The notes under the pieces were generated by a model, which was given only the letters and a program-made list of their open reading frames with translations, ran no database searches and was not told the origin of the DNA. The position numbers and the translations under genes are program-made. This document shows, piece after piece, positions 27,418-64,000 of a stretch of 64,000 bases of DNA; position 1 is the stretch's first letter, and every line of letters starts with the position of its first letter. The stretch spans positions 62,001-126,000 of IMG/VR virus record IMGVR_UViG_3300011113_000640, one strand, 5' to 3'.

Positions 27418-27639
27418 TCAATAGAGTTTTTTTGGTAGTTGTTGATCACGCAGTTTTTTGCGCCAGCGTGCAGCGGCACCACCTTTTTTGCGTTTTCTTT
27501 TGGTAGTGGGTTTTTCGTAGGTTTCGCGACCTCGCAGTTCCTCCAAGAGGCCTTGTTCTTGGATCTTTTTCTTGAACTTGCGCAGAGCACGTTCCACATT
27601 GCCGTCTCGGACGACCACGCTTCTGCGATACTCTTTCAC
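27418..27639 (-). CDS. rpsU: Ribosomal protein bS21
   Basis: [12 protein letters not shown]...[15 protein letters not shown]...AARWRKK. Confidence 0.9.
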
Positions 27640-28835
27640 GAATTTTCCTGTAACAGTGTCATGGGTGTATTTACCTGGGTTTTATTGATTGTGACCTGTA
27701 ATATATTTTGTCGACGGTACCGGGGCAGATCAAACATGTGCGGCAATAACACCCGCTCCAGTTCGCTGTGTAATCCGCGGGCACCTGTGCCGGTTCTCAG
27801 TGTGCGTTCCACTATGAGATCCAGGCTTTCGGGATCAAATTGTAGATTTACCTGATCTTGATCAAACAACCATTGGTATTGACCCACAAAATTGTTTTTG
27901 ATTTCTGTCAACACACTGATCAATTGTGCCCGGGTCAGGGCATGTAGGTTTACATAGTTGCTGAATCTACCCACAAATTCGGGTATCATTCCATACCGCA
28001 CCAGGTCTTCTGGAGTAATGGGTTCTTGTCGGGTATCATCCGCCGATGAGATTTGTGCAGCAAATCCCATGGCTGTGCCTTGCACACGATTTTGTATGAT
28101 ACGGTCCATGCCCACAAACGCACCGCCGGCTATAAACAATATATTTGAAGTGTCAATCTCTACAGTTTCTGTAGTGTTGCTTTTTCTTGTTCCTTGCACA
28201 GGCACCTTGCATCGAGTGCCTTCGACCAATTTCAGCAAGGCCTGTTGCACACCTTCGCCGCTGACATCTCGACTGACCGTTGCACTTTCGCTTTTACGAG
28301 CTATCTTGTCAATTTCGTCCAGGAACACTATGCCGCGCTGACAGCGTTCTACATCGCCATCGGTGGCCATGTATAATCTTGTGATCATGCTTTCTACGTC
28401 ATCGCCTACATAGCCTGCTTCGGTCAAACAGGTGGCATCGGCTATGACAAACGGCACATCAAGATATTCGGCTACGGTGCGGGCCATCAAGGTTTTGCCT
28501 GTGCCAGTAGGACCGATCATGAGTATGTTGGCCTTGGCTATGCGTCGGTCGGCCTGACCGATACGTTTGTAATGATTGGCTATGGCTACGCTGAGCACAA
28601 TCTTGGCTGAATCCTGCCCTACCACGTGCTGATCAAGGTAATCTCTTATGTCTTTGGGATCAGGAACTGAAACTGTGGCGGGCTTTTTTTCTGGTGTGGC
28701 CTTGGTATCTTTGAGAAGCCCGCCACACAGATCCACACACTCGTTGCAGATGGCTACCTTGTGACTGACTATGAGTTTGCCCACACGATCTTTGTGTTTG
28801 TCACAGAAACTGCAATGTTCTATGGCCGGGCTCAC
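27636..28835 (-). CDS. clpX: ATP-dependent Clp protease ATPase subunit ClpX
   Basis: CSFC/ICNEC Zn domain, [38 protein letters not shown] loop, TGARGL; start uncertain (28835 GTG or 28889). Confidence 0.95.
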
Positions 28836-28836
28836 G

Positions 28837-30420
28837 TCAGGCCTGTCCGGTAGATCGTAATCTTTGTTCAATGCTGTCACGTTCAGCATCGCTCAACAAC
28901 TCAGGATCATATTCACCTGTGCTGATTTTTTCTATGAGATGATCTATGTAGTCGTCATTGTAGGCATGGGTATCACTTTGAGACTTGTCTACTTCAATCC
29001 AGGTTTTGCCATTGAACTTGTATAGCACACTGGGCAGTTGATCCACACGCAAGAACATGTCACTCTTGTTGGGGTTTGGTGGAAACGCGGTACCAAACCC
29101 GCGGACTTCACCCATTAATCCTTCAGGACGGTTGTCAGCTTCTAGGCCCAGTTGATCTTGATAGGCAGGATGATTCCAAGGAAAGTCTTCTACCTGTCCT
29201 GTTTGATGCATGCGGCGCCAATGTTTGATTGTTTCTCTTGGGTTGGCTTCTTTCCATTTTCTAATGGCTTCTTTTTCTCGAGGATCAATGCTGTCATCTA
29301 TGTCATCATCTGTTTTAATTTCATCAACAACTGTGTCTACCGGCTGGTTTAATGGAGCATGATCAGCTTCAGGATCTCGGTTAACGATTTTTTTGGCACG
29401 TGTCCACATGCTGTCTAGGCCAGCCAACACTGTCTGTTTAACAGTCTTTGCGGATTTAGCCGGGTCTTGTTCATCGGGCACATCAATTTCCGGGCCGGTC
29501 TGCGTCCATTCGTCTGTGCCCGAACGTATACCTTCAAACTCTCGAGGGAATGGCCATGGCACAGGTTTTTCCTTTTGTTGTTGATCCCAAAATCTGGCAC
29601 GCTCACGAGCTCGATCAAACCAAGATTGGACTTCTGGATCCTTATCGTTGACTTGCGTTTGATTTTCGCGCTCCCATTCAAAGGTCTTGGTGGCGGCCAA
29701 CAACAGGGTCAGGGCCAAGGGATCAAACACTATGACTATGAGTATGATTACCCAACGCACGGCCTTTTCTAACAGATTGGCATCGGGATTGTCACCATAT
29801 ATGAGTGCGGCAATGTATTTGATAGGACCTACTTCGGCTTCAATCTGCCGAGCTTGGCTGGCTATGGGTGCTCGTTGTTCTTGTAGTTTGGTAATCTCGC
29901 TCTGTGCCCGAGAAATGTCGTTCTGTAGATTGCCACGTTCACGGGCCTGACTACGGCGCAGGTTGGCAGCTTTGTCTGCCCCTTGCTCGCTAATGCTACG
30001 ACTCATGGTCTGATCCACGGCTTCATCCATTTGGCGCAGGGCCTTTCTGGCTGCTTCTATGTTGTCACGCTGTGTCCGGATCTTGTCATCGTAGATCTGC
30101 ACCTGGGCCTGTATGTCGCCCGACGGTACAGCCTGATCCAGGTGTGCCTTGGAAAGGAAGCCAAACACGCCCATGCTGGTCAAGACCATGAGTATGGCCA
30201 CAGCGGCACTGAGATATATCTTGTACTGCATTTCTGCACGGTGCCAATACTTGTGCAACCAGAGAGTTGATACCACCTTGCCTACTTCAAGACTGCTACC
30301 AAGAATAACAATGGGCCAGAAGGCCGCGGCAAATATGGCTGTGAGACCAAGTATGCTGTAATAGGCTGCACTCACTGATATGATCAGTGCAGTTGCGAGA
30401 GTTAGTATGCCAAACCACAT
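28837..30420 (-). CDS. Membrane protein with coiled-coil and acidic C-terminal region
   Basis: Three N-terminal TM segments, heptad region, EVGPIKYIA...VFDPLA TM. Confidence 0.7.
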   Translation of the reverse strand: MWFGILTLATALIISVSAAYYSILGLTAIFAAAFWPIVILGSSLEVGKVVSTLWLHKYWHRAEMQYKIYLSAAVAILMVLTSMGVFGFLSKAHLDQAVPSGDIQAQVQIYDDKIRTQRDNIEAARKALRQMDEAVDQTMSRSISEQGADKAANLRRSQARERGNLQNDISRAQSEITKLQEQRAPIASQARQIEAEVGPIKYIAALIYGDNPDANLLEKAVRWVIILIVIVFDPLALTLLLAATKTFEWERENQTQVNDKDPEVQSWFDRARERARFWDQQQKEKPVPWPFPREFEGIRSGTDEWTQTGPEIDVPDEQDPAKSAKTVKQTVLAGLDSMWTRAKKIVNRDPEADHAPLNQPVDTVVDEIKTDDDIDDSIDPREKEAIRKWKEANPRETIKHWRRMHQTGQVEDFPWNHPAYQDQLGLEADNRPEGLMGEVRGFGTAFPPNPNKSDMFLRVDQLPSVLYKFNGKTWIEVDKSQSDTHAYNDDYIDHLIEKISTGEYDPELLSDAERDSIEQRLRSTGQA

Positions 30421-34261: not shown

Positions 34262-35626
34262 TTACAGTTTTTCTCCTTGTTCAAATCCACGGAAGCGGAC
34301 AAAGCGGGGGAACCTTAGGCTATAGGTTCCATCTTGATTTTGGGTGACAGCGTCTGCCGCAACCTCAACCACTCGGCCAAGTAGGTCATTTCGGGAATGC
34401 CAATATTCATCACGATCAGCATCGGAAAGGCCACTGCCCACATTAACACGAATATTACGATCATTATCATTTCCTTCGCATATTATAGCACCCAAACGCC
34501 CTTGATTGCGACCTGTGCCTTCTTCAAATCCTACAATATTTAAGTCCACGGTCATCACAGGTTTCCATTTCATCCAGAAACTCGACCGTTTGCACTCGTA
34601 GGGTGCACCTACGTCTTTGATCATGACGCCTTCAAAGCCTTGGGCCACAGCATCCTCGGCAAATCTGCGCATGACATCTTGTCCTTCTGCGGTGCCGAGA
34701 TCCACATCCATACCAGGCATGATTCGGAGATTTGTTTCGGCTTCGATCTCTTGTCGGTTGATCTCCAACATCAAAGTGCGTTTATGTTGTTGGGCATTCC
34801 AAAATCCACGCTCAAAGTCTGCCAACGGAATCACATCAAAAATATAGTAGTTCATGTCCTTGGTCTTGACATTGTCTTTTCGTTGCGCCTGTTTCATCAA
34901 GGCCTGGAAACTTTCGCCCACGATCTCACCATCCAGCACAAACGGACCTTTGGTCTCAAGACTGATGCGATGTTTGATTCGGTTCAGTTGTTCTTGGATA
35001 TCTGGAAAGTTTTCAAATATCTTACCGTTGCGACTGTACAAGGTCACACGGTTCTTGGTGCATAACGCCAGCACACGCACACCATCCAGCTTGCACTCTA
35101 TACGTTTGATGCCCTTCATCTTGTTGGCGTGATCATTGCTGTCTGTGGCCAATTGGCAAGTGAACACAGGAATCCTCCACTCGGTCTTGCCCAGGATCTT
35201 GTTGAGTGTTTTTTCACTGATACCACAGCGCAGGTCTTTGATGATGACTCTGCGGCACAGGCCATTCCACTCTTCGCTGTCAAACTGCTCACTCATGGCC
35301 AGGATGGCATCTCTAGCATCATGTCCAGTGACACTACGAGTCCGCAAACTTTCTAACAGTCCCCAGAATGCCGGCCAAGGGTTAGGCCTGCCTGTCAGCC
35401 CTTCGGTCTCTGGCACTTGACGCACACCAAACACATGGAAGGGATTATAGGCTTCATAGCAGTTGAACAAGAAACATTGAGCATTGGCACTGCCCAGCTT
35501 GGCAGCCATGAGTGCTTTTTCAATTACTTTTTCTTTGTGTATTCTGCTGTCACTGCTTTCGAGATCGCGGATCCAGTCTGCGGCCAATTTTAATCCTTGG
35601 AATTTGACATCTTGCATGACTATCAT
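34262..35626 (-). CDS. ATP-dependent DNA ligase
   Basis: KLDGVR, SRNGK, LDGEI, EGVMIK, WMKWK, VGSG, SLRFPRF. Confidence 0.95.
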   Translation of the reverse strand: MIVMQDVKFQGLKLAADWIRDLESSDSRIHKEKVIEKALMAAKLGSANAQCFLFNCYEAYNPFHVFGVRQVPETEGLTGRPNPWPAFWGLLESLRTRSVTGHDARDAILAMSEQFDSEEWNGLCRRVIIKDLRCGISEKTLNKILGKTEWRIPVFTCQLATDSNDHANKMKGIKRIECKLDGVRVLALCTKNRVTLYSRNGKIFENFPDIQEQLNRIKHRISLETKGPFVLDGEIVGESFQALMKQAQRKDNVKTKDMNYYIFDVIPLADFERGFWNAQQHKRTLMLEINRQEIEAETNLRIMPGMDVDLGTAEGQDVMRRFAEDAVAQGFEGVMIKDVGAPYECKRSSFWMKWKPVMTVDLNIVGFEEGTGRNQGRLGAIICEGNDNDRNIRVNVGSGLSDADRDEYWHSRNDLLGRVVEVAADAVTQNQDGTYSLRFPRFVRFRGFEQGEKL

Positions 35627-43925: not shown

Positions 43926-46253
43926 TTATAGTTTGCATGCTAGACAATCTTCCTCTAAGAGGTCGCTGTCGGGTTCTTGAGTGTGCAAGACCTGTGGTGC
44001 TTCGTCTTGACCTTTGGATCCTTGTTTGTTGATCAGACTGTAGTAGAATGTTTTTAAACCCCAACGATGTGCTTGCATGAGGTTGGTGGCGATCAAGGTT
44101 GTAGGCACCTTGCGATCCGCAAAGTGCGCAGGGTTATAGAATGTGTTGGTTGAGATGCTTTGATCCACATAGGCAGCAATCACAGCTGCGGTCTTCAAGT
44201 AATTTGCACAGTCTCGTTGTTCCCACATGAGTTGATATCTGTTCTTCAACTTGTTGTACTCTGGAGCCACCTGGATCAAACTTCCTGCTTTGGATTCTTT
44301 GACAGTGATCAAGCTCATAGGCATTTCAATACCATTGGTTGAGTTGATCACAACCGATGACGACTCAACCGGAGCCACTGCCATGAGTGTGGCATTGCGC
44401 ACACCATGGATCTTCATCTTTTCACGCAGTGATTCCCAATCAAGTTCTGGTTTGAAGTTGGCCAGTTCGTTGACAGCCTTGGCGCGAAGCTCCCATGGAA
44501 ACACACCTTGTCCGTAGCGTGTTAATCCGCTGTGACTGCATGGTCCACGTTCTTTGGCCAATTCAACTGTGGCTTCTGTCAAATAGTAGGCTTGATGTTC
44601 CATCCACGACTTGACTTCTTGCAAGGCATCTTTTTCACCATACAGCAAGCCACGTTTTGCGTGCCAGTATGCTAGATTAGTGATGCCAATGCCCAAGGGT
44701 TGTATCTCTTGGTTTGACAGCATGCTCTGGATACTCAAATAGTCTTGATAATCAAGTATGTTACATAGACTGCGCTGTAAGATACGGCAGGCTCTGCGCA
44801 TGTCTTCGGGATTACGGAACGCACCCCAGTTGATGCTCCCCAATGTGCATAGTGCGATACGTCCGGCATCGTCATCGAGCCGCTTGAATGGCTTGGTGGG
44901 CAACAAAATTTCACAGCAAAGGTTGCTCTGATAGATGGCATGATACTCAGGATCAAATGGACCTTGGTTGACCACGTTGTCAATGTACACCAGATAGATG
45001 CGTCCGGTGTCAGTGCGCTCTTTGAGGATGCCGCCTTTGAACACATCCTCGGCACTCATGATTTTCTTTCTTAGATCTTTTCTTTTTTCATACTTGACAT
45101 AGAGTTCTTCAAACCGCTCTGGATCTGTATAAAATGCTTCATACATGTCTGGCACTTGGTTAGGATCAAAGAACGTGATTTGTTCCTTGTTCTTAAAACG
45201 CCGCCAAAAGAACGATGATAATACCACTCCGTAATCCATGTGTCGGACTCGTGTTTCTTCAGTGCCTTGATTGTTCTTGAGCACAATGAGATCATCAAAC
45301 TGATAATGCCAGATAGGATAGAACACAGTAGCACTCGCATTACGGATACCTCCTTGTGAACAACTACGCAAATCACCAAACCATTTTTTCAGGAATGGTA
45401 TCATGCCAGTGTGCATGACTTCACCACCGCGAATGGCGGCACCCAAGGGACGCAGACGACCAACTTCCAGGCCAATACCTGCACGTTTGGCCGCATACTT
45501 GGCCATCATTTCGCCACTAGCAAATATAGAGTCCAAATCGTCGTCGGCGCGAATAAGTACACAACTCGAAAACTGTTTGGTGGGAGTACCCAGACCAGCC
45601 AGTACAGGTGTAGCCAGAGTAAAAAGGCCATCACTGGCACAATTATAATATTCTTTGATGTAACGCATCCTAGCAGTGTTGGGTTCTTCTCGATGGAACA
45701 CAGTAGCTGCTGCCACCATGTATCTAACTTGTGGGGTTTCATAGATCTCCTTGGTGGCACGATTGCGTACCAGATATTTTTCAATCAACTGTTCAATGGC
45801 CGCATATGAATACTGTTCGTCTTTTTCATGATCGATCATGTCGTTCATGCGATTCCAGTCTTCTTCGGTATACCACTCCAACAACTCTGCGGTATACAGA
45901 CCAGTGGCTACATTCTTCTTGACAATTTCGTACAGGTGGGGAGGTGTGTAACTGCCATACACATCCTTCCTCAACATGCTGAGTCGTTGTTTACCTGCCA
46001 CGAACTGATAGTTGGTGTGGCCCACGTCAGGATTGGCTTCTACATCAATCAAGTCCACAGTGGCACGCAAGGTAATACCATCAATCTCTTGTGTGGTAAT
46101 ACCATCATAAAAGTGCAACTGTGCTTTGATTTCTATCATGCTCTGACTTACGTCAGCAATGCCCTGGCAGACCTTGGCAACCTGTGCCTGCCACTTGTCA
46201 ATCTGTAGTGGCTCTTTTCGTCCGCTTCTTTTTTCTACCGTAATCTGCGTCAT
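43926..46253 (-). CDS. nrdA: Ribonucleotide reductase class Ia alpha subunit with ATP cone
   Basis: QFSSC, SCSQGGIR, SNLCCEI, APVESSS, KTFYY, C-terminal CLAC. Confidence 0.97.
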   Translation of the reverse strand: MTQITVEKRSGRKEPLQIDKWQAQVAKVCQGIADVSQSMIEIKAQLHFYDGITTQEIDGITLRATVDLIDVEANPDVGHTNYQFVAGKQRLSMLRKDVYGSYTPPHLYEIVKKNVATGLYTAELLEWYTEEDWNRMNDMIDHEKDEQYSYAAIEQLIEKYLVRNRATKEIYETPQVRYMVAAATVFHREEPNTARMRYIKEYYNCASDGLFTLATPVLAGLGTPTKQFSSCVLIRADDDLDSIFASGEMMAKYAAKRAGIGLEVGRLRPLGAAIRGGEVMHTGMIPFLKKWFGDLRSCSQGGIRNASATVFYPIWHYQFDDLIVLKNNQGTEETRVRHMDYGVVLSSFFWRRFKNKEQITFFDPNQVPDMYEAFYTDPERFEELYVKYEKRKDLRKKIMSAEDVFKGGILKERTDTGRIYLVYIDNVVNQGPFDPEYHAIYQSNLCCEILLPTKPFKRLDDDAGRIALCTLGSINWGAFRNPEDMRRACRILQRSLCNILDYQDYLSIQSMLSNQEIQPLGIGITNLAYWHAKRGLLYGEKDALQEVKSWMEHQAYYLTEATVELAKERGPCSHSGLTRYGQGVFPWELRAKAVNELANFKPELDWESLREKMKIHGVRNATLMAVAPVESSSVVINSTNGIEMPMSLITVKESKAGSLIQVAPEYNKLKNRYQLMWEQRDCANYLKTAAVIAAYVDQSISTNTFYNPAHFADRKVPTTLIATNLMQAHRWGLKTFYYSLINKQGSKGQDEAPQVLHTQEPDSDLLEEDCLACKL

Positions 46254-46282
46254 CCGTCTCTCGTTCTTAAATTTTTTTACTA

Positions 46283-46699
46283 CTACTTTATGTGGTGTTG
46301 CTGGTATTGCCGTTTGATCGTTACTGCTTGGATGGTATTTAATATTGAATTAGTTTCCCAATTCAGTATATATTTTGATTGTTCCACCAGGACTAAATTA
46401 TGCCCAGTTTCAGTCAAAACCAGGCGTGCCGGCTGTAAATCTGGTCGTTCCAGCAAAGTTATAGTATACAGGATTCCTAAGCCTCTTGCAAGTTCACAGT
46501 AGATGTCATCACTCAAAAGTTGCCAAGGATCGGGCCAGGTTTTTTGGTCATCCCAGTGTAGATAGTAAGGTCGCCAAGGTGCTCGAAACCACCAAGCATT
46601 AATGTGTTCTAGTGCAGATTGAGCAGAGAGATTTTGGCAATGGACACGCAACTGATTCCAGCTTTCCAGCCGAGCGGCAAATGTAACAGGCCAGATCAA
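46283..46699 (-). CDS. Hypothetical protein (possible transglutaminase-like fold)
   Basis: WPDPWQLL...YCE; 138 aa, TTG start. Confidence 0.55.
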   Translation of the reverse strand: MIWPVTFAARLESWNQLRVHCQNLSAQSALEHINAWWFRAPWRPYYLHWDDQKTWPDPWQLLSDDIYCELARGLGILYTITLLERPDLQPARLVLTETGHNLVLVEQSKYILNWETNSILNTIQAVTIKRQYQQHHIK

Positions 46700-48303
46700 G
46701 CTAGATAAGTGACAGAGTAGTAAATGGTGCCATTGATGCCAGTGTCTGTGGTAGTGTAATCCAAAGATACATCAGACCCTGTTTGACTGACAGACAGTGT
46801 GGCGCCGGTACTGCCATTCTCTACATAGTCATCGTTGAAGGTTAGAACTGTTCCTGCACCCCCATCTGAAGCAATCAAGATAAAACCTGTGCGATAAAAA
46901 TTATCGCGTATGATGGTGTAATCAATTTTGAAACATTTATTAAACTCGGTGCTGAGCGTAACAACCGTGCCTGTGGAATCGTTGATCAAAGTTGCTTGGG
47001 AGCCGCTGAGTCTGGTATACTGTCCCATCTGCAGGCTTTCGCCATTGGTAGTGGCGATACTGAGAGTGGTAGTACCATTGCCGGGATTGGTCAAACTAAT
47101 ACGCGGATAAATTTCAGCCGAGGTGTCATTGCGTTCAAACATGTCACCTATGCTGACATTGTTGTTGCTTTCAATACTGATGTTGGAAGCAATTACTGTG
47201 TTGTTTGACCCAGTAAATTCATTTCCAACGTCATAGAATACATTGTTGGCACTGGCATTCAAAGCTGTGTTTAAATATTGTCCAAATATGATACCTTCGG
47301 CATAGATATTATCAAATACATTGCCTGTGATCCTGGAACCAGTTGGACCGCCATCAACTGTTGAGCCTGTGCCCAGCAAGATACCTTGATACAAAACATT
47401 TAAATAACTGTTGGTCACAGTCAATCCCTTGGTAGGATAGTCTGTGTACACAGCATTGACCAACCCAGAGAATGTGCAAGTGTCGAACACAATCTGTTGG
47501 CATATGAAACTGGCATCGCTGAGCAGGCTGACACCAATGCTGCCATTGGTGTCTGTTGTGAGATCTGTTGTGGTGCTGGCGCCTGTGATGCCTACGTTTT
47601 TGAATGACATGTTGATGGCGTCTTGTACTAAAAACACGCTGCCAGTGGGATCCAGATGTGTGAATCCCATGTTGGAGATGGTAATGTTCTGTGGGCCGGT
47701 GGCTCCTGCGTTGCCAATGTTGTTGCCAGTTTGTTGCAAGCTGTCAGCTGTGCGTGCCACATAATCCGCCACACCGTCGTCCATGGCGATTACGCTGTTG
47801 TCGCCACCTTCACCAAACAGTGTGGCATACGGCGGAATATTGATACTCGAGGTAATACGATACACGCCAGCTGGAAAATACAAGCTACGACGTATTTGTG
47901 GGTTGACTTCTCGGCAAAACAGCTGATACAGGGCGCGATTAATGGCCGCGGTGTCGTCAGTTGACCCATCGCCTACTGCTCCAAAATCCGTGACCGATGC
48001 ATACTGATCCAACCAACTCTGTAAACTCTGTGTCACAGGTGTGCCCAGAGTAGGTCCGGTCTGCACTGTGTAGCCTGCTGCTTGACCTTTATAGGTATAG
48101 GTGTTGGTAAAAGCCAGGATGTCGCTGAATTCTGTCAGTATTTCTGTGTTGCCTATGACCGGAGCACCATCTTGTATGGTGCCGTTGCCGATGAATAATC
48201 TGCGCGAATCAGTGCTCCACCCTAATTCAGCTCCAGCTAATTGAGGAAGATTTTCTTGTAATCCTTTGCGATTGGTAATCTGCGAAATCTGTACTATGGC
48301 CAC
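46696..48303 (-). CDS. Tailspike-like protein: Mtd-N-type head plus pectate-lyase-like beta-helix
   Basis: LPQLAGAELGWSTDSRRLFIGNG; SVTDFGAVGDGSTDDTAAI...YFPAGVY. Confidence 0.8.
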   Translation of the reverse strand: MAIVQISQITNRKGLQENLPQLAGAELGWSTDSRRLFIGNGTIQDGAPVIGNTEILTEFSDILAFTNTYTYKGQAAGYTVQTGPTLGTPVTQSLQSWLDQYASVTDFGAVGDGSTDDTAAINRALYQLFCREVNPQIRRSLYFPAGVYRITSSINIPPYATLFGEGGDNSVIAMDDGVADYVARTADSLQQTGNNIGNAGATGPQNITISNMGFTHLDPTGSVFLVQDAINMSFKNVGITGASTTTDLTTDTNGSIGVSLLSDASFICQQIVFDTCTFSGLVNAVYTDYPTKGLTVTNSYLNVLYQGILLGTGSTVDGGPTGSRITGNVFDNIYAEGIIFGQYLNTALNASANNVFYDVGNEFTGSNNTVIASNISIESNNNVSIGDMFERNDTSAEIYPRISLTNPGNGTTTLSIATTNGESLQMGQYTRLSGSQATLINDSTGTVVTLSTEFNKCFKIDYTIIRDNFYRTGFILIASDGGAGTVLTFNDDYVENGSTGATLSVSQTGSDVSLDYTTTDTGINGTIYYSVTYLA

Positions 48304-58014: not shown

Positions 58015-59025
58015 TTATTGGTTTTGGCCACAGTTGTCATCACAAATAACCAAACGTCCTTGTTCATAGTTTGGTATTTTCCATGCTTTTTCAACAGATT
58101 TAAACCATTCTACACATTCTTGCAAAGGGTGTTCTAGGGCATTGTTTTTAACTATCAGTGGAATCAACTGTGCATTGGCCGCTTGATGGTATTGTCCGGC
58201 ACCATATGTCTTAGGATAAAAACCTGTGTAGCAACATGGGCTAACATCACCGGTGGCTGAAATATAAATGGATTTTAAATTCTTGGTTTCACAGCTAATA
58301 GATGTTGCAGGTACTTGATCAGCTGTGATATCCTCTAGCAAAACATGGTCTGTTTTTTTCTTGTGAAACAAAATCTCAAAATTACGTTCACCTGTGTAGT
58401 TGCCCATGACATGTACCAAATTGCCATGCTGATCAAACACCGGCGCAGTATCACGTCCGTCATTTTTTAATTTAAACTCTTTAAATCCTAGGTCTTGGCT
58501 TATTTTTTTGCAGGTATCAATTTGATGTCTATTGTGATCAAATGGAATCATACTCCAAATAGCATATCCGCCTGCACTGATAAATTCTTTGGCATTCTTG
58601 ATAACCGTGGACCATTGCGTGTTTTGTCGGTAAAGGTGATGTGTGTCCTTGAGCCCATCTAAACAAAATTGCACGGTAGCTGGTGTACGTGCCAGTCTAG
58701 TCCAAAAATCTTTGTTTCTAGCACCACCATTGGTACTGATAGTTACTGCAAGTTCTGGATTGTGAGAGAAAAAATAGTCTACTATTGCCGGCCCTTCGGA
58801 ATTCATAACGATGTCACCAAAATTGCCGTTGATACGAATACTGGTCAACTGTTGTAAAAACTCAGGGCGAAAGATATGTCGGGCTTGTGTTAAACTGAGA
58901 TTGGTTTCAGGGTACCCGCCGTTGTAGGGATACCCCCAGAATGTTCTAGGACACCAAGAACAACTGGCGTTGCAAAGGCTAGAGATTTCCAAATGAACAT
59001 CTCTTATGTCTTGATACGCAATCAC
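58015..59025 (-). CDS. Radical SAM protein with SPASM/twitch-like domain
   Basis: CNASCSWC, NGNFGD, STNGG, GDVSPCC, C-terminal CxxxC. Confidence 0.85.
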   Translation of the reverse strand: MIAYQDIRDVHLEISSLCNASCSWCPRTFWGYPYNGGYPETNLSLTQARHIFRPEFLQQLTSIRINGNFGDIVMNSEGPAIVDYFFSHNPELAVTISTNGGARNKDFWTRLARTPATVQFCLDGLKDTHHLYRQNTQWSTVIKNAKEFISAGGYAIWSMIPFDHNRHQIDTCKKISQDLGFKEFKLKNDGRDTAPVFDQHGNLVHVMGNYTGERNFEILFHKKKTDHVLLEDITADQVPATSISCETKNLKSIYISATGDVSPCCYTGFYPKTYGAGQYHQAANAQLIPLIVKNNALEHPLQECVEWFKSVEKAWKIPNYEQGRLVICDDNCGQNQ

Positions 59026-60419
59026 GTGGTTTTGATTTTGCCTAATAGTTGTTTGAGTTTGGCACTCTGCACATCTGCTGTGATTTTGCCAGACTCTACA
59101 ATTTCTTCTTCTACAGGTGTGGTCATACGGCTTTGTGTTCTAATACTGCTTAAAATATCAGGTTTCTTGAACGCATTGACTGGTCCAGCGTCTTCGCCTG
59201 GATCGGTGATACGCATGGTTTCAATGTTGTAATCCAAGTCAATCTTTTGTCCTACACCTGTACTGCTACGGCTCTTCATACACTGTATCTGATACTTGCC
59301 ACGTTCACGCATGGCTCTTGATGTAAAGATACCAAACACGTTGTCTGCTGTGTTGATCTTTGAGATACCACCCGATATATGGCTGTGATCGAATTCAATT
59401 TCCTCCACAGCACTTCTGTTCAACTGACTTGCTGTCACAAACAACACATTGAGTTCTTTGGCCAAGTTACGCAATTCTTCACTCACATATTTGTCTTTGA
59501 CAAACAAGTCATTTGGTGATACTTTGGCACTCACGGGCATCAGCAAGTCCAAGTAATCACACATGACGAAATCCACTTTCAATCCTGTTTGTACTTGGAC
59601 TTCTTTGATGTAGCTTCGTATATCATTGATGTTGCTCTGTGCCGGCAAGGCCTTGATACGATACTGTCCGGCTTTCTTGCTCACAAGTTTGACCTTGAGT
59701 TCGGTCTGATCAATGTCCTTGCGGATCTCCTTGGTGCTCATGCCTGCCAACATGGCATCGGTTCTCAACGCACAAAGTTCTTCACTAAGTTCTAAACTGA
59801 TATACACACCAGACAAGCCAGCCTGCAACCAGCTCAATGCTATGTTCATCATGACTAAGGATTTACCACTACCCGATCCACCTGCAAATATGTTCAATTC
59901 GCCGCGGCTGAATCCGCCATACAGGATCTTGTCCATCTGTGGCCATCCTGTGCTCACTTGTCCACCGCTGTTAAAGTATTTGTTGATCCTTGCTTTGGGA
60001 TCAGACCAGTAGTCTGTGCCCATGTCTTTGGTCAGACTGATCTGTACCGCATCCTTGATCAGTTTCTCCACAGGATCGTACTCGCCTTTTTCCAGCAAGT
60101 CTGCACTCTTTAGGATTGCACGTTCCAGTTCCTGGCGTCTAGTAAAGCCTTCAAACTCGTCCATGAACCACTCAAAGTGTCCGTCGTTCAAATCTGGAAT
60201 ATGATTCAGTTGCACACCTGTGCTGGCTGCGATCTGTTCCGTGGTGGGCAAGGTCTTATGATCGTCACTGTGTTTGGCAATAAACTCGGCCGCAGGTCGC
60301 AAACTTCTATCAAAGTTTTCGGGATTGTAGATGTTCTGCACACGCACATAACTTTCTGCGTCTTGCAACATCATTTCTAAGAATAGGCGTTGGACTTCAA
60401 GTCCGTAATCTTTTAACAA
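59022..60419 (-). CDS. Replicative DNA helicase (T4 gp41/DnaB-like)
   Basis: GGSGSGKS, SLELSE, DYLDLL, TASQLNR, KSR. Confidence 0.92.
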   Translation of the reverse strand: MLKDYGLEVQRLFLEMMLQDAESYVRVQNIYNPENFDRSLRPAAEFIAKHSDDHKTLPTTEQIAASTGVQLNHIPDLNDGHFEWFMDEFEGFTRRQELERAILKSADLLEKGEYDPVEKLIKDAVQISLTKDMGTDYWSDPKARINKYFNSGGQVSTGWPQMDKILYGGFSRGELNIFAGGSGSGKSLVMMNIALSWLQAGLSGVYISLELSEELCALRTDAMLAGMSTKEIRKDIDQTELKVKLVSKKAGQYRIKALPAQSNINDIRSYIKEVQVQTGLKVDFVMCDYLDLLMPVSAKVSPNDLFVKDKYVSEELRNLAKELNVLFVTASQLNRSAVEEIEFDHSHISGGISKINTADNVFGIFTSRAMRERGKYQIQCMKSRSSTGVGQKIDLDYNIETMRITDPGEDAGPVNAFKKPDILSSIRTQSRMTTPVEEEIVESGKITADVQSAKLKQLLGKIKTT

Positions 60420-61383
60420 GTTGTTTCTTCCTTAGTTCTATTTTAATTTTACTGGTTTCCTTGGCCTGCATGATAGTTATCAAAGTTGCTACCTTTCCCC
60501 AACGAATCACAGCATCGTTGACATCTTTTACATCCGCAGGCCATGTAGGCATGCTTACACTCCATCCAAGTTCCACAGCACGATCCACCAACTTCATACC
60601 TGCTTCGTCTTGATCTGGAACCACTATGACTTCACGATCTAAACTGCGAATTAGACGTACCTGGGAGTCATTGATCTCAGCATGCAACACAGCCAAGCCG
60701 CCGATGCTGAGTGCGTCAAACACACCTTCGACCACTAGAGCATAACGCCAGTCTGCCCCTTGCAGATCTGTGCCAAACACATAACCTGGTTGTGTGTCGT
60801 GGATATACTTGGGCTGACGATTGTCCAGCATCCTACTGCTGTAGCCTACCACGCGATTGTCATAGGTAAATGGAACTATGACCTGTGGACGTGTCCAATG
60901 CACACTGTCATTTTCCAACACAGTCATCACAGGATAGTCTTCGGGTATTGCACGGCCACGCAAGTAATCCCAGTGCGGACTATGTTTTGTGGTGACCAGT
61001 TCTGCAGCAGGTGGCAGGTCACGTTCTTCAAACTCTATGCCTTGCAAGGTGTTGCTTAACCTTTGACGATCTGTCAACAGACCTTCCATGCTACGATGGC
61101 GCAGGCTTTCAAGATTGATGCGTTCTATTTCTTCCGTGGGCACACCCAACCATGACATGAACTTGCGTGCTTTGAAACTGAGATTACGACCTATGATAAA
61201 GCTGGCAGTGTAACCACAATTGAAACAATGATAACTCCACCCTGCGTCAGAAGTTTTGATGCCGCCTCGGTTGCGACGGTCTCGACTTTCTCCCATGTGC
61301 TCACAACAGGGTGCATTAAAACTGATCCACCCCGAAGCACTGGGCTTGCGTCGTGCGGGTAAATAAGAAATCACATCAATCAT
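60397..61383 (-). CDS. DNA primase (T4 gp61-like)
   Basis: Zn-binding APCC/HCFNC; TOPRIM VEGVFDA, PDQDEAG, KDVND. Confidence 0.88.
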   Translation of the reverse strand: MIDVISYLPARRKPSASGWISFNAPCCEHMGESRDRRNRGGIKTSDAGWSYHCFNCGYTASFIIGRNLSFKARKFMSWLGVPTEEIERINLESLRHRSMEGLLTDRQRLSNTLQGIEFEERDLPPAAELVTTKHSPHWDYLRGRAIPEDYPVMTVLENDSVHWTRPQVIVPFTYDNRVVGYSSRMLDNRQPKYIHDTQPGYVFGTDLQGADWRYALVVEGVFDALSIGGLAVLHAEINDSQVRLIRSLDREVIVVPDQDEAGMKLVDRAVELGWSVSMPTWPADVKDVNDAVIRWGKVATLITIMQAKETSKIKIELRKKQLVKRLRT

Positions 61384-61428: not shown

Positions 61429-62598
61429 TTATCTGTAAAGAAGGTCAAGCACATAACCTGTGCTGATTACCACAGCAGCACTGGACACTGATGGTGGAGT
61501 AGGACTGGTCACACTGGTTGAGCCTGCATTAGGCAGATACCAATAACCACTTCCACCATTGGTCACTGTGATACCTGTGACCACACCGCCCGAGATAGTG
61601 GCTTCTGCTGTGGCTCCAGCACCGCTGCCAATGATGTTGATCTTGGGAGGCGCCAAGTACCCGCTTCCGCCATTGACCACGTTGATTGCAGTGACCACAC
61701 CATCTTCGGTCACAGCCGTGGCCAGGGCAGGAGTGCCCGGTTGGTCGGGCACAGCAAAAATGCTGTTGTTGAAACACAATCTAATTATAGGATACCAGCC
61801 CACAATATTCATGTATATGGTGCCAGTTTTGTTGTAATAAGTCCAAGATAGCCCGGGGCCGTCTATGGTTTCGGTGGGCACATTGTAAAACAGGCTTTGG
61901 TAGTTTTCTGCGGCCTGCGCTTTGATTGTTCCTGTGTAACCGTCCAGGGTCATCTGCACCGTGGTAATGCCCTTGGTGGGTTCAATAAAACTGCTGAAGT
62001 ATTCGGTATTTAAGAAACTGTTGTAGTAATTTCCACCATTAGGGTTGCCAGAATAGTACGGATTAGAAGGCCATTGGGTCCATCCAATGCCATCTGGACT
62101 GCCTTGAGCACTGAGTTTGATGGTAGGTATGGTGAGTGGTGCACTGGGCACATACTGTGGTAAGATTGAATCCACAATGTTTACAGGGGCACGGGCACCG
62201 GCCTGCGCATCCACAAACACAGCTTCCACAAGGTTACCACTGCTGCGTTGTATGCTGTAGTTGGCCGGTTGTGCCAAGACTTCTAGCAGTTCTGCACTGG
62301 TCAAAGTTACCTTGGCGCGGCCGGTGGGAGCATTCAAGATCACCATGGGTTTTTCTATCAGCAATACATCACCTTCAGTGCTGATCACTCGGAACAGGAA
62401 CGTGCTACCTGTGATGTTCACAGGTTTTTCTTGCTGGTTGATAAACTCAAACAAGAGCACGTTATCAACACCTTTGTTTATGGTCAGGACTTTGGCGTAC
62501 ACAGGATCATACCTATAGATAAAAGTTTCGCCCGCGCCGGTGTCCATGAGCAAGACTCTGGTGATCTGCTGATAGATATAGGCTTGGGTGGAATACAT
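61429..62598 (-). CDS. Baseplate/tail structural protein
   Basis: BppU-like N-terminus; NGGSGY...GAGATA...NGGSGY repeats. Confidence 0.65.
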   Translation of the reverse strand: MYSTQAYIYQQITRVLLMDTGAGETFIYRYDPVYAKVLTINKGVDNVLLFEFINQQEKPVNITGSTFLFRVISTEGDVLLIEKPMVILNAPTGRAKVTLTSAELLEVLAQPANYSIQRSSGNLVEAVFVDAQAGARAPVNIVDSILPQYVPSAPLTIPTIKLSAQGSPDGIGWTQWPSNPYYSGNPNGGNYYNSFLNTEYFSSFIEPTKGITTVQMTLDGYTGTIKAQAAENYQSLFYNVPTETIDGPGLSWTYYNKTGTIYMNIVGWYPIIRLCFNNSIFAVPDQPGTPALATAVTEDGVVTAINVVNGGSGYLAPPKINIIGSGAGATAEATISGGVVTGITVTNGGSGYWYLPNAGSTSVTSPTPPSVSSAAVVISTGYVLDLLYR

Positions 62599-62658: not shown

Positions 62659-63036
62659 ATGAGCACTGAATTTTTTGCCCAACTAGCGGAAAAATATCCG
62701 TTTATCACCTTGTGTGTGTATGCTACCACGGAATATGTGGGCATCATACAGAATCAAGACGATGCTATAACCACCATCTATGATTTTGGAGCCATACAAG
62801 ATCTAGCAATCAAACGCAGATTTCTTGAGCTGGCCAACGTTTGGTGGTGGGAAAGCAATAGAACTGTGCCTATAAACATATTCTTGAAAGGTGAGTGGGA
62901 CGTGTTCCGCCCCTATCTGCGTACATTTACCAACAAGGACCTGGAAATCCTGCACGGGCCCATATGCAGTCTCAGTGAAATGAGCCGCAAAAAAAGCAAG
63001 AGAAAAAGTATTACCTTAGTTCGGCGTGTTGAGTAG
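62659..63036 (+). CDS. Hypothetical conserved phage protein
   Basis: YVGIIQN...WWWESNR..PINIFL; TAAATA at 62643. Confidence 0.7.
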   Translation: MSTEFFAQLAEKYPFITLCVYATTEYVGIIQNQDDAITTIYDFGAIQDLAIKRRFLELANVWWWESNRTVPINIFLKGEWDVFRPYLRTFTNKDLEILHGPICSLSEMSRKKSKRKSITLVRRVE

Positions 63037-63585
63037 ATTCATGTGCAGGGCTACCAAGGCCGCATAACTAATCGCATGTGATTTCTTGAACACAAATCCT
63101 CGGCTGTCATCACCGTCCCACACTGAGGTAAACACTTGCTCCCAAGGCAGATTCTGTAGGTGTGCTTTGCCGGGTCTAATAATAGATATGAAAGCTGCCA
63201 TCCTAGGGATGCTGTCAGGGCGCATGGTTTTTAACAGTTCTGTATAGTTGCCCACGTGCACCAGTTGGCCTGCCCAATCCGAGTCGGTCCGTAGTCGCGA
63301 CCAAGGTGGTTCCAGGGCCAACATCGCTTCATAGTGTGATGGACTCTTTATCAGTTGATACACACTCATGTTCAGCAGATCGATCTTGAAATAACCCAAC
63401 TGTTCGGCTGTTTCGTAGTCTATGGCCGCACAGGCATTAACAGGATCCTGGGGTATGTCTGTGACATATATGCCACTGTTGTGACGACGCACCTGTCCTT
63501 GATTGATTTGTCGTGCTGGAACAGATTGTATCAATCGCAACAACTGATCTCTGTCAGCCAAGTCGATGTCAATGTCTGCGCTCAT
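63016..63585 (-). CDS. Miniature DNA polymerase III alpha (DnaE)-like protein
   Basis: DIDID, HNSGIY, FKIDLL, IIRPG and FKKSHAISY, collinear with the C-family polymerase core. Confidence 0.75.
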   Translation of the reverse strand: MSADIDIDLADRDQLLRLIQSVPARQINQGQVRRHNSGIYVTDIPQDPVNACAAIDYETAEQLGYFKIDLLNMSVYQLIKSPSHYEAMLALEPPWSRLRTDSDWAGQLVHVGNYTELLKTMRPDSIPRMAAFISIIRPGKAHLQNLPWEQVFTSVWDGDDSRGFVFKKSHAISYAALVALHMNLLNTPN

Positions 63586-63998
63586 TTTGAATATTTCCGC
63601 AAAATCTGATCAAGTTTCATTGGTCCTAGGGCTTCTATTGTGTTAGAAAAAAAGTAATTGTAGTTGTGTTCGACAAGATCTCGAGCCTGAGCACTGACCA
63701 AAATTTCAGGATGTTGGGCCATCCAGTTGATGGCCTCTGCACACATGCGATATCTTGCTATATGATCTTTTTCGTAATTATATGATTGTAACTGTTCTGG
63801 CAACAAATTCCAAGCAGTTTTAAATCCTAATTGGTTATACAACACGTCGGTGTTGGCCCCAGCAATGGGCCAAGGTATAGATTTAGTGATTGCACATTTA
63901 AGCAGTTTTTCAGTGATCCAGACTTCGTCATTTAACCATGTGGTTTCAGGAAATATCACACAATGATATGCAAGATATTCATCAATGACAAAGAAGCC
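63582..63998 (-). CDS. Glycosyltransferase-like protein (TEK family paralogue 3), 5'-truncated
   Basis: Frame open to the window end; IFPET...WITEK...LGFKT. Confidence 0.5.
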   Translation of the reverse strand, partial: GFFVIDEYLAYHCVIFPETTWLNDEVWITEKLLKCAITKSIPWPIAGANTDVLYNQLGFKTAWNLLPEQLQSYNYEKDHIARYRMCAEAINWMAQHPEILVSAQARDLVEHNYNYFFSNTIEALGPMKLDQILRKYSK

Positions 63999-64000
63999 CG

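What the first reader, a model, noticed from the sequence alone, without database searches (positions are those of the whole stretch)
63016..63585. 189-aa miniature DnaE: the C-family polymerase catalytic core condensed into one small ORF
Seen: collinear motifs DIDID, RHNSGIY, GYFKIDLL, IIRPG and FKKSHAISYA in an intact ORF with its own start and stop, close to primase and helicase. Known: in DnaE (over 1000 aa) the matching motifs PDxDxD, HAxG, KxDxL, RPG and FNKSH span several hundred residues, and the three catalytic Asp lie in DxD and KxD. All three are kept here, while the PHP, most thumb/finger, HhH and OB regions are missing through internal deletions rather than simple truncation. Inference: a streamlined enzyme with a new role (primer extension, terminal or protein nucleotidylation, DNA modification) or the core of a multi-gene split polymerase.
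Basis: partly seen in the sequence, partly recalled or inferred. Interest (0 to 1): 0.75.

Follow-up and report, generated by a model that had tools for sequence, protein, structure and literature searches.

The report
Half of a split mini-DnaE polymerase
This 189-aa ORF is a real, strongly conserved relative of the bacterial replicase DnaE, but it is only the metal-binding half of a two-gene "minimal Pol III alpha" already described in T4-related jumbo phages in 2021; its nucleotide-binding half lies 102 kb away in the same phage genome.

Summary
The ORF (window 63016-63585, minus strand, 189 aa) and all five motifs are as reported. Homology to DnaE holds. A family profile hits only Pol III alpha chains in the PDB (E 3e-6). 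An AlphaFold model (pLDDT 95.8) aligns over 183-187 residues with PolC, Taq and E. coli alpha (Z 8.4-9.8; best unrelated Z 3.7), covering E. coli residues 399-780. D4, D6, K67 and D69 are invariant, lengths are stable and dN/dS is about 0.12, so it is not a decaying fragment.

It is not a complete catalytic core. The N-terminal half of the palm, with the GRGS nucleotide-binding loop, is a separate 179-aa gene 102 kb away. That gene ends exactly where this ORF begins. The two genes co-occur in jumbo phages (92 and 96 records), occur fused as 375-aa proteins in a rare lineage, and are predicted to bind (score 0.91; best control 0.44).

The host is a 320-kb uncultured freshwater jumbo phage with a complete family B polymerase. 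Iyer et al. (Viruses 2021) described this split minimal Pol III alpha, and PHROGs files it as "DNA polymerase". So this is a new member of a known but biochemically untested kind. Polymerase activity and a primer-extension role are inferred only.

The parts
63016..63585 (-). C-unit of the split minimal Pol III alpha (189 aa): the Asp-bearing strands of the palm plus a reduced finger module.
   Evidence: ORF. phrog_11778 'DNA polymerase', E 9e-52, full length. Family profile against the PDB hits only Pol III alpha, E 3e-6. AlphaFold pLDDT 95.8. VIA-align Z 8.4-9.8 to E. coli, Taq and PolC. dN/dS 0.12.
63562..63576 (-). DIDID (aa 4-8). D4 and D6 correspond to E. coli D401 and D403, the metal ligands.
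   Evidence: D4 and D6 are invariant and D8 is at least 90% conserved in 83 cluster representatives. All three are 100% conserved in 81 close ORFs. The model start aligns to E. coli residue 399.
63379..63387 (-). K67-I-D69, corresponding to E. coli K553 and D555 (the third catalytic Asp).
   Evidence: Invariant. Aligned to the E. coli motif VKFDFLGL by HMMER.
63166..63177 (-). R137-P-G-K140 finger motif, corresponding to E. coli RPG 639-641.
   Evidence: P138 is invariant; R137 and K140 are at least 90% conserved. Alignment.
63076..63090 (-). F166-K-K-S-H170, corresponding to E. coli F756-N-K-S-H760. H170 is the counterpart of the presumptive steric-gate His.
   Evidence: Alignment. H170 is at least 90% conserved and 100% in close relatives. 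The role of H760 is taken from PMC8485763.
62659..63036 (+). Convergent 125-aa gene (phrog_11637, function unknown) that overlaps the 3' end of the C-unit by 21 nt. It has a WWWESNR..PINIF motif and a basic tail. It is always adjacent to the C-unit.
   Evidence: phrog_11637, E 4e-33. Present in 78 of 80 related IMG/VR loci and in Phosso, Paride, CBB, Atu_ph07 and PA5oct. Cross-lineage alignment. Also found beside the fused form.
61429..62598 (-). 389-aa protein resembling a virion structural protein, embedded in the replication block.
   Evidence: Its C-terminal part hits baseplate and virion PHROGs. The gene at this position is annotated as a virion structural protein in Phosso, CBB and Atu_ph07, and as a structural protein found by ESI-MS/MS in PA5oct. 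Syntenic in 68 of 80 loci.
60397..61383 (-). Toprim DNA primase (328 aa).
   Evidence: Pfam Toprim_2 and phrog_47 'DNA primase', E 8e-32.
59022..60419 (-). DnaB-like replicative helicase (465 aa).
   Evidence: Pfam DnaB_C, E 3.5e-21; phrog_19, E 3.6e-71.
63582..64000 (-). 3' end of a 389-aa upstream ORF that runs beyond the window end. Its stop overlaps the C-unit start (ATGA). It is lineage-specific and has no family hit.
   Evidence: Conserved in only 2 of 80 related loci.

Best explanation
The ORF encodes the C-terminal subunit ('C-unit') of a two-gene, split, minimal C-family polymerase.

The C-unit carries:
- the beta-strands with the three metal-binding Asp (D4, D6, D69);
- the Lys next to the third Asp (K67);
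- a cut-down finger module with the RPGK and FKKSH motifs, including the counterpart of the steric-gate His.

The missing N-terminal half of the Pol-beta-like palm is a 179-aa 'N-unit' at bases 22,548-23,087 of the same 320.5-kb phage genome, 102 kb from the C-unit. It holds the helices and the GRGS loop that grips the triphosphate of the incoming nucleotide. The N-unit ends at ..EFLR, equivalent to E. coli alpha about residue 393. The C-unit begins at about residue 399.

The two polypeptides most likely assemble non-covalently, with the active site at their interface. The product would be a core of about 370 aa without PHP, thumb, clamp-binding, HhH or OB domains. Because it keeps the steric-gate His and the finger motifs, it probably adds dNTPs to a primer in a template-directed but poorly processive way.

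The phage has a complete family B replicase, so this enzyme is auxiliary. Its fixed position in the block of UvsW-like helicase, C-unit, primase and DnaB suggests a fork-associated job, such as first extension of primers or gap filling or repair.

Shown: homology, fold, selection, the partner gene, co-occurrence, the fused form and the predicted interface.
Inferred: physical assembly in vivo, DNA polymerase activity and the biological role.
For: Identity and fold:
- phrog_11778, E 9e-52.
- The family profile against the PDB hits only Pol III alpha chains.
- AlphaFold pLDDT 95.8.
- The top 18 Foldseek hits are all C-family polymerases.
- VIA-align Z 9.8, 9.6 and 8.4 to PolC, Taq and E. coli alpha; the model maps to E. 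coli residues 399-780.

Selection:
- D4, D6, K67, D69 and P138 are invariant in 83 representatives of 50%-identity clusters.
- 81 intact ORFs of 183-209 aa have a median dN/dS of 0.116.
- At least 7,889 relatives are in the metagenome protein set.

Partner gene:
- PF07733 finds a 179-aa ORF whose match covers only model positions 25-94, at 33 bits against a cut-off of 23.9.
- It matches phrog_11127, E 1e-40.
- NCBIfam DnaE models match it at positions about 278-389.
- Its PDB alignment covers E. coli residues 342-392.
- All 35 IMG/VR homologues end in EFLR or EFLK followed by a stop.

Linkage of the two units:
- C-unit in 96 phage records and N-unit in 92, with the same taxon counts.
- Both are present in the four related near-complete genomes covered by both searches (five records per search), 91-100 kb apart.
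- Three clusters of natural fused proteins of 375-376 aa (N-unit, about 10 aa of linker, C-unit), from independent assemblies.
- Complex prediction score 0.91 in all three runs against a best control of 0.44. That mark was reached by 58 of 80 solved complexes and 2 of 110 mismatched pairs. The interface joins N-unit residues 139-152 (the GRGS loop) to C-unit residues 3-10 (DxDxD) and 167-170 (KKSH).

Context:
- A complete 885-aa family B polymerase with exonuclease and polymerase domains.
- No PHP domain anywhere in the genome.
- Conserved synteny with primase and DnaB in five distant phage lineages.

Literature: Iyer et al. 2021 predicted the same split enzyme.
Against: - No biochemical or genetic data exist for any member of the family.
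- The complex prediction may score high simply because the two chains resemble one solved polypeptide. The tool itself warns of this.
- The core lacks a thumb, clamp-binding motif and any recognised DNA-binding domain, so it is unclear how it would hold primer-template DNA.
- The C-unit alone does not reach any Pfam threshold.
- The N-unit profile reaches the PDB only at E 0.022.
- Synteny with primase and helicase may reflect a frozen core gene order rather than function.
- No transcription evidence was obtained.
Confidence: 0.8

Rival explanations
1. Stand-alone miniature polymerase: the 189-aa protein is by itself a complete, streamlined nucleotidyltransferase.
For: All three catalytic Asp and two finger motifs lie in one intact, well-folded ORF.
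Against: - The ORF begins three residues before the DxD strand. It has no counterpart of E. coli alpha 280-398, so it lacks the GS nucleotide-binding loop and the two palm helices that every Pol-beta-fold transferase needs.
- That segment is a separate gene that always co-occurs with it, ends exactly at the junction, and is fused to it in one lineage.
Confidence: 0.04
2. The heterodimer is catalytically active but is not a templated DNA polymerase. It could be a terminal or protein nucleotidyltransferase, a nucleotide-signal synthase, or a DNA-modifying enzyme.
For: - The loss of thumb, clamp-binding, HhH and OB domains removes most known DNA contacts.
- Pol-beta-fold enzymes are functionally diverse (established knowledge).
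- The phage already has a proofreading family B replicase.
Against: - The family keeps the finger motifs RPG and FxKSH, which are specific to C-family polymerases, and the counterpart of the steric-gate His that selects deoxyribose.
- Its conserved position is inside a helicase-primase-DnaB block.
Confidence: 0.12
3. Decaying remnant: a pseudogenised fragment of a once full-length phage or host dnaE.
For: - It is very short compared with DnaE and has no Pfam hit above threshold.
- An earlier paper called the N-unit 'truncated'.
Against: - dN/dS is 0.04-0.19 over 235 pairs.
- 81 of 81 related ORFs are intact, with lengths of 183-209 aa.
- The catalytic residues are invariant at about 30% overall identity.
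- The model is confident.
Confidence: 0.01
4. Split-intein DnaE, as in cyanobacteria: the two halves are joined covalently by protein trans-splicing.
For: Cyanobacterial dnaE is also encoded as two distant genes (established knowledge).
Against: - There is no room for intein halves. The N-unit stops directly after EFLR in 35 of 35 homologues.
- The C-unit has only three residues before DxD.
- The fused form has a linker of only about 10 aa.
- The cyanobacterial split lies elsewhere, in a full-length DnaE (established knowledge; not tested here).
Confidence: 0.01

Closest known systems
Split minimal DNA polymerase III alpha of group 2.2 (T4-related) jumbo phages (Iyer, Anantharaman, Krishnan, Burroughs and Aravind, Viruses 2021, PMC7824862); PHROG families phrog_11778 (C-unit) and phrog_11127 (N-unit)
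   Same: - The same two-gene architecture, with the genes far apart.
- The same division into an N-terminal nucleotide-binding part and a C-terminal Mg- and template-binding part.
- The same genomic background: a jumbo phage with a family B polymerase and no other Pol III domains linked to the pair.
- Full-length PHROG matches.
   Different: - This member is from an uncultured freshwater phage and is only 33-41% identical to the versions in cultured phages.
- Its genome also carries an unsplit 557-aa PHP-less DnaE.
- I did not find the fused 375-aa relatives, the always-adjacent convergent gene or the predicted interface in the passages of that paper that I read.
Bacterial DnaE / PolC (C-family replicases; PDB 2HNH, 2HPI, 3E0D, 3F2B)
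   Same: - The Pol-beta-like palm with Asp equivalent to D401, D403 and D555.
- The K553 equivalent.
- The RPG and FNKSH finger motifs, including the H760 equivalent.
- Structural Z 8.4-9.8.
   Different: - 189 aa, or about 370 aa with the partner, against 1,000-1,400 aa.
- No PHP, thumb, clamp-binding, HhH or OB domains.
- The palm is split between two polypeptides.
- It sits beside a family B replicase instead of being the replicase.
Bacillus subtilis DnaE beside PolC (a two-polymerase fork in which DnaE extends primase-made primers; PMC5627055, abstract listed)
   Same: - A second, C-family polymerase coexists with the main replicase.
- Here it is encoded next to primase and helicase, which suggests a comparable hand-off role.
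   Different: - This is purely an analogy for function.
- B. subtilis DnaE is full length and binds the clamp.
- No activity data exist for the phage enzyme.
Cyanobacterial split-intein DnaE (two distant genes joined by protein trans-splicing)
   Same: A DnaE encoded by two widely separated genes.
   Different: - There are no intein segments at the junction.
- Assembly here must be non-covalent.
- The split site lies inside the palm.

Membership tests
C-family DNA polymerase catalytic core (Pol III alpha / DnaE / PolC) | Three catalytic Asp on the palm sheet (E. coli D401, D403, D555). | tested here: met
   D4, D6 and D69 are invariant in 83 representatives. They are aligned by HMMER and by structure.
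C-family DNA polymerase catalytic core (Pol III alpha / DnaE / PolC) | N-terminal half of the palm with the GRGS nucleotide-binding loop, in the same polypeptide. | tested here: not met
   The ORF starts at the equivalent of E. coli residue 399. The GRGS segment lies in a separate 179-aa gene at genome bases 22,548-23,087.
C-family DNA polymerase catalytic core (Pol III alpha / DnaE / PolC) | Finger motifs that bind the incoming dNTP (RPG; FNKSH with the steric-gate His). | tested here: met
   R137-P-G and F166-K-K-S-H170 are conserved and aligned to E. coli 639-641 and 756-760. The role of H760 is from PMC8485763.
C-family DNA polymerase catalytic core (Pol III alpha / DnaE / PolC) | Pfam PF07733 (DNA_pol3_alpha) above the gathering score. 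| tested here: not met
   The C-unit has no PF07733 hit. Its only hit is DNA_pol3_finger at 11.4 bits against a cut-off of 22. The N-unit passes at 33.2 bits against 23.9.
C-family DNA polymerase catalytic core (Pol III alpha / DnaE / PolC) | PHP, thumb, clamp-binding, HhH and OB modules of the replicase. | tested here: not met
   189 residues cover E. coli 399-780 with 183 aligned. No PHP domain is found anywhere in the genome.
C-family DNA polymerase catalytic core (Pol III alpha / DnaE / PolC) | Template-directed DNA synthesis. | not testable with these tools
   This needs primer-extension assays. I found no published assay.
Split minimal Pol III alpha of group 2.2 jumbo phages (Iyer et al. 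2021) | Two stand-alone proteins, one nucleotide-binding (N-terminal) and one Mg- and template-binding (C-terminal), encoded by distant genes. | tested here: met
   The N-unit is at 22.5 kb and the C-unit at 125 kb of the 320.5-kb genome. The split point is fixed.
Split minimal Pol III alpha of group 2.2 jumbo phages (Iyer et al. 2021) | The host genome is a jumbo phage with a family B polymerase and T4-type replication genes. | tested here: met
   The virus record is 320,541 bp. It has an 885-aa PolB with an exonuclease domain, as well as DnaB, primase, a UvsW-like helicase, an ATP-dependent ligase and a ribonucleotide reductase.
Split minimal Pol III alpha of group 2.2 jumbo phages (Iyer et al. 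2021) | Orthology with the versions in PA5oct, RaK2-like phages, Atu_ph07 and XacN1. | tested here: met
   Full-length tblastn matches at 33-41% identity in 96 records. phrog_11778, E 9e-52. Shared synteny.
Split minimal Pol III alpha of group 2.2 jumbo phages (Iyer et al. 2021) | No other Pol III alpha domain-bearing gene in the genome (as stated in the paper). | tested here: not met
   This genome also has an unsplit 557-aa DnaE-like gene with a palm and fingers. It is accessory: present in 2 of 5 relatives and absent from 4 cultured phages.
Split-intein DnaE | Intein N- and C-fragments flanking the junction. | tested here: not met
   The N-unit ends at EFLR followed by a stop, and the C-unit has three residues before DxD.

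The most novel reading that the evidence does not exclude
The N-unit and C-unit form the smallest working C-family DNA polymerase, about 370 aa with its active site at a subunit interface. A third subunit may be the 125-aa basic-tailed protein, whose gene always overlaps the C-unit gene convergently and which could stand in for the missing thumb or DNA-binding parts.

This enzyme would act at the fork with primase and DnaB as a dedicated primer-extension or gap-filling polymerase beside the family B replicase. That would be a phage counterpart of the DnaE/PolC division of labour, and a living model of the ancestral Pol III core.
Probability: 0.2. Interest if true: 0.65.

Novelty: new member of a known kind. 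Interest (0 to 1): 0.38.

Why it matters
If the two small proteins do rebuild an active polymerase, they define the minimal working unit of the bacterial replicase family. That would show which of DnaE's 1,100 or more residues are dispensable for catalysis. It would also give a tractable model for how C-family polymerases arose, as Iyer et al. argued. And it would show that a large, widespread group of jumbo phages (at least 7,889 relatives in metagenomes) runs two unrelated polymerase families side by side.

For this scan the practical point is narrower. The finding is real but already published, and the 'one-ORF core' reading is wrong. The extra observations made here give concrete handles for the experiment that is still missing: the fixed split point, the natural fusions, the predicted interface and the always-adjacent convergent gene.

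Tried and rejected
- **Single-sequence searches.** The C-unit alone gave nothing meaningful against the PDB and only a sub-threshold finger hit in Pfam. A family profile was needed.
- **N-unit profile against the PDB.** It reached Pol III alpha only at E 0.022. Assignment of the N-unit rests on Pfam, NCBIfam and PHROGs instead.
- **Joint alignments of the fused protein with N- and C-units (A3, A6).** MAFFT laid the N-units over the C-half, so I discarded both and made no model of the fused protein.
- **Second structure prediction (N-unit, then the 125-aa neighbour).** No model of the neighbour or the N-unit was obtained.
- **Foldseek 'viral' library.** Closed.
- **Transcription evidence.** The only 'RNA' runs found hold relatives and were judged 'probably DNA'. 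The reads laid were short and under 90% alike, so they are uninformative.
- **Supplements.** Neither the PA5oct omics paper nor Iyer et al. has supplements held as text.
- **Possible companions in the own genome.** A DnaQ-type exonuclease (PF00929), a PHP domain (PF02811) and the gp45 clamp C-domain (PF09116) were not found. CBB and Atu_ph07 do carry a DnaQ-like gene.
- **The 125-aa neighbour.** The ESM Atlas feature search and a PDB profile search gave no lead.
- **Rejected readings.** Pseudogene, split intein and stand-alone enzyme (see the rival explanations).
Full report
**1. The observation**

The ORF is real. It runs from 63585 down to 63016 on the minus strand, is 189 aa long and starts with ATG. 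That ATG overlaps the stop of the upstream gene (ATGA). The five motifs are present and in order: DIDID (aa 4-8), RHNSGIY (34-40), GYFKIDLL (64-71), IIRPG (135-139) and FKKSHAISYA (166-175). A Toprim primase (60397-61383) and a DnaB-type helicase (59022-60419) follow on the same strand.

**2. Is it DnaE-like?**

Yes.
- A single-sequence search of the PDB finds nothing, and Pfam gives only a sub-threshold finger hit.
- PHROGs gives a full-length match to phrog_11778 'DNA polymerase' (E 9e-52) and a local match to the 1,190-position DnaE family phrog_405.
- A search of 1.84 billion cluster representatives gave 363 relatives. Nearly all complete sequences are about 180-215 aa.
- An alignment of 83 of them (A1) has D4, D6, K67, D69 and P138 invariant. 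D8, H35, G38, R137, K140, K167 and H170 are at least 90% conserved.
- The A1 profile finds only Pol III alpha chains in the PDB (nine best hits, E 3e-6 to 5e-5). It aligns the KxD motif with E. coli K553/D555, RPG with 639-641 and FKKSH with F756-H760.
- AlphaFold2 on A1 gives pLDDT 95.8 and pTM 0.88.
- The 18 best Foldseek hits are all C-family polymerases.
- VIA-align gives Z 9.8 (PolC, 970-1296), 9.6 (Taq, 460-837) and 8.4 (E. coli, 399-780), with 183-187 residues aligned. The first unrelated chain has Z 3.7.

So 189 residues stand for a stretch of about 380 residues in DnaE. E. coli H760, matched here by H170, is the presumptive steric gate against ribonucleotides, and D401, D403 and D555 are the catalytic Asp (PMC8485763).

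**3. Not a pseudogene**

Eighty related IMG/VR loci all carry an intact ORF of 183-209 aa, with every motif residue conserved. Median dN/dS is 0.116 (range 0.04-0.19) over 235 pairs with dS between 0.1 and 1.5. The metagenome protein set holds at least 7,889 relatives.

**4. Not a complete core**

The window lies at 62,001-126,000 of a 320,541-bp IMG/VR virus record. Searching that genome with Pfam PF07733 gave two places, neither of them this ORF.

- **The partner (N-unit).** One place is a 179-aa ORF at about 22,548-23,087 (minus strand). It ends ..WGVGRGSSVSS..EFLR followed by a stop.
  - It matches only positions 25-94 of the 260-position model, at 33.2 bits against a cut-off of 23.9.
  - It matches phrog_11127 'DNA polymerase' (E 1e-40).
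  - NCBIfam DnaE models match it at positions about 278-389.
  - In the PDB it aligns to E. coli alpha 342-392 (weak, E 0.022, though the nine best hits are all Pol III alpha).
- **The junction.** The N-unit stops at about E. coli residue 393, and the C-unit starts at about residue 399, three residues before D401. The ORF in the finding therefore lacks the GS loop and the helices that complete a Pol-beta-type palm.
- **A fixed split point.** All 35 IMG/VR N-unit homologues end in EFLR or EFLK followed by a stop.

**5. Do the two halves belong together?**

- **Co-occurrence.** The C-unit is in 96 phage records and the N-unit in 92, with the same taxon counts. These include Escherichia, Pseudomonas, Klebsiella, Erwinia, Salmonella, Xanthomonas, Yersinia, Agrobacterium, Pectobacterium and Serratia phages.
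- **Relatives.** Each unit was found in all five related IMG/VR records searched for it. The four near-complete genomes common to both searches carry both, 91-100 kb apart.
- **Cultured phages.** In Phosso, Paride, CBB and Atu_ph07, PF07733 finds only the N-unit.
- **Natural fusion.** Three 90%-identity clusters (P0165, P0271, P0272; 375-376 aa) come from independent assemblies. Each is an N-unit, a linker of about 10 aa and a C-unit. The N-half of the fused protein P0165 matches the N-unit profile at 99.4% probability by hhalign and ends at the same point. The fused gene sits in the C-unit's usual locus. The nearest split C-units are 51-59% identical to the fused forms.
- **Predicted complex.** The score is 0.91 in all three runs against a best control of 0.44. 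That mark was reached by 58 of 80 solved complexes and 2 of 110 mismatched pairs; because my own alignments were used, these counts hold only roughly. The interface joins N-unit residues 139-152 (the GRGS loop) with C-unit residues 3-10 (DxDxD) and 167-170 (KKSH). The pass may partly reflect memory of intact DnaE structures. It supports binding but does not prove it.
- **No intein.** No intein sequence fits at the junction.

**6. Genomic context**

- **Host.** It is an uncultured freshwater jumbo phage (lake and viral metagenomes).
  - It has an 885-aa family B polymerase with exonuclease and polymerase domains.
  - It also has a ribonucleotide reductase and an ATP-dependent ligase.
  - No PHP domain was found.
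- **Gene order around the C-unit.** The order is: UvsW-like helicase, three conserved unknown genes, the C-unit, a convergent overlapping 125-aa gene (phrog_11637), a virion-type protein, primase, then DnaB.
  - This order holds here.
  - In the 80 related loci the neighbour gene is found in 78; the virion-type protein (68), primase (58) and DnaB (41) counts fall off as contigs end.
  - The core order from the C-unit to DnaB also holds in Phosso, Paride (PA5oct-like), CBB and Atu_ph07; an upstream helicase is annotated in Phosso, Paride and CBB.
- **Gene order around the N-unit.** It has its own conserved neighbourhood, with a Cpn10 co-chaperonin two genes downstream both here and in PA5oct.
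- **Age of the split.** It therefore predates the divergence of these lineages.

**7. Prior knowledge**

- The N-unit was noted as a 'truncated' Pol III alpha of 172 aa in phage CBB in 2017 (PMC5259590). It was noted as a Pol III alpha subunit in Atu_ph07 (PMC6102473).
- Iyer et al. 2021 (PMC7824862) recognised both parts. [quoted passage not shown] The parts correspond to the nucleotide-binding N-terminal subdomain and the Mg- and template-binding C-terminal subdomain, and may cooperate with the family B enzyme in synthesis of one strand or in repair.
- I found no later experimental work.
- The ORF is thus a new member, 33-41% identical to those of cultured phages, of a known and computationally described kind.

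**8. Mechanism and confidence**

- **Most likely.** A non-covalent heterodimer rebuilds the palm with the active site at the interface. It adds dNTPs to a primer with low processivity, as an auxiliary enzyme of the fork or of repair.
- **Shown.** Homology, fold, purifying selection, the partner gene, co-occurrence, the fusion and the predicted interface.
- **Inferred.** Assembly in vivo, polymerase chemistry and the biological role.
- **Rivals.** See the rival explanations for details.
  - Stand-alone enzyme: rejected.
  - A non-polymerase transferase: possible.
  - Pseudogene: rejected.
  - Split intein: rejected.

**9. What went nowhere**

The RNA evidence was uninformative. Joint alignments for the fused protein failed. 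Details are under 'tried and rejected'.

Noticed in passing
outside the window: own genome G000 about 46,051-47,724 (+), locus L002:1435-3108: A third C-family gene in the same phage. It is an unsplit, PHP-less 557-aa DnaE-like protein with a complete palm (PF07733 positions 21-260) and a finger domain. The GS, DxD and KxD motifs are intact. Its best NCBIfam model is the error-prone DnaE2 type, far below the cut-off. It is accessory: present in 2 of 5 related near-complete genomes, absent from 4 cultured relatives, and only one phage record (LR756508.1, 484 kb, uncultured) has a close full-length match. This phage therefore carries a family B polymerase, an unsplit mini-DnaE and the split mini-DnaE.
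   Followed up: partly
window 62659-63036 (+): A 125-aa gene of unknown function (phrog_11637) is convergent with the C-unit gene and overlaps its end by 21 nt. It is present next to the C-unit in 78 of 80 related loci, in all five cultured lineages checked, and beside the fused form. It has an invariant WWW, a near-invariant ESNR, an invariant PI (PINIF in the consensus) and a basic KRxKRK tail. There is no Pfam, PDB or Atlas lead. It is a candidate third subunit, or it may simply be a frozen neighbour.
   Followed up: partly
loci L121:1066-2193 and L130:519-1649 (metagenome contigs): Natural fused N-plus-C proteins of 375-376 aa fall into three clusters from independent assemblies. They sit in the C-unit's usual locus. 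The nearest split relatives are 51-59% identical, so this is a rare lineage in which the two halves are one polypeptide.
   Followed up: yes
window 58015-59025 (-): A radical SAM / SPASM-domain protein (336 aa) lies directly downstream of DnaB, and its start overlaps the end of the helicase gene. It is present at this position in only about 4 of 80 related loci, so it is a variable insertion in the replication block.
   Followed up: no
window 61429-62598 (-): A 389-aa protein with virion- and baseplate-like C-terminal repeats sits between the polymerase piece and the primase. The gene at this position is annotated as a virion structural protein in Phosso, CBB and Atu_ph07, and as a structural protein found by ESI-MS/MS in PA5oct. 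A structural gene is thus fixed inside a replication module.
   Followed up: no
window 63582-64000 (-) and L131:83-1252: The ORF upstream of the C-unit is cut by the window end. In the genome it is 389 aa, has no PHROG hit and is conserved in only 2 of 80 related loci. Further upstream lie three conserved unknown genes (phrog_11058, 11758, 11279) and a UvsW-like helicase.
   Followed up: partly
loci L127, L128, L129 (GTDB genome contigs): C-unit relatives (69-77% identical) lie on contigs binned into Bacteroidota MAGs: two in a Haliscomenobacter MAG and one in a Lishizhenia MAG. These are probably phage contigs binned with a host, which gives a weak hint that this freshwater clade infects Bacteroidota.
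   Followed up: no
outside the window: L003:447-845 (-) (own genome about 21.5 kb): A Cpn10 / GroES-like co-chaperonin lies two genes downstream of the N-unit. The same arrangement is seen in PA5oct (N-unit EST35_0288, chaperonin EST35_0290).
   Followed up: partly
window 43926-46253 (-), 34262-35626 (-), 27636-28889 (-): The window also holds a ribonucleotide reductase large subunit, an ATP-dependent DNA ligase and an AAA+ ATPase with weak clamp-loader similarity. No tRNA genes are present in the window.
   Followed up: no
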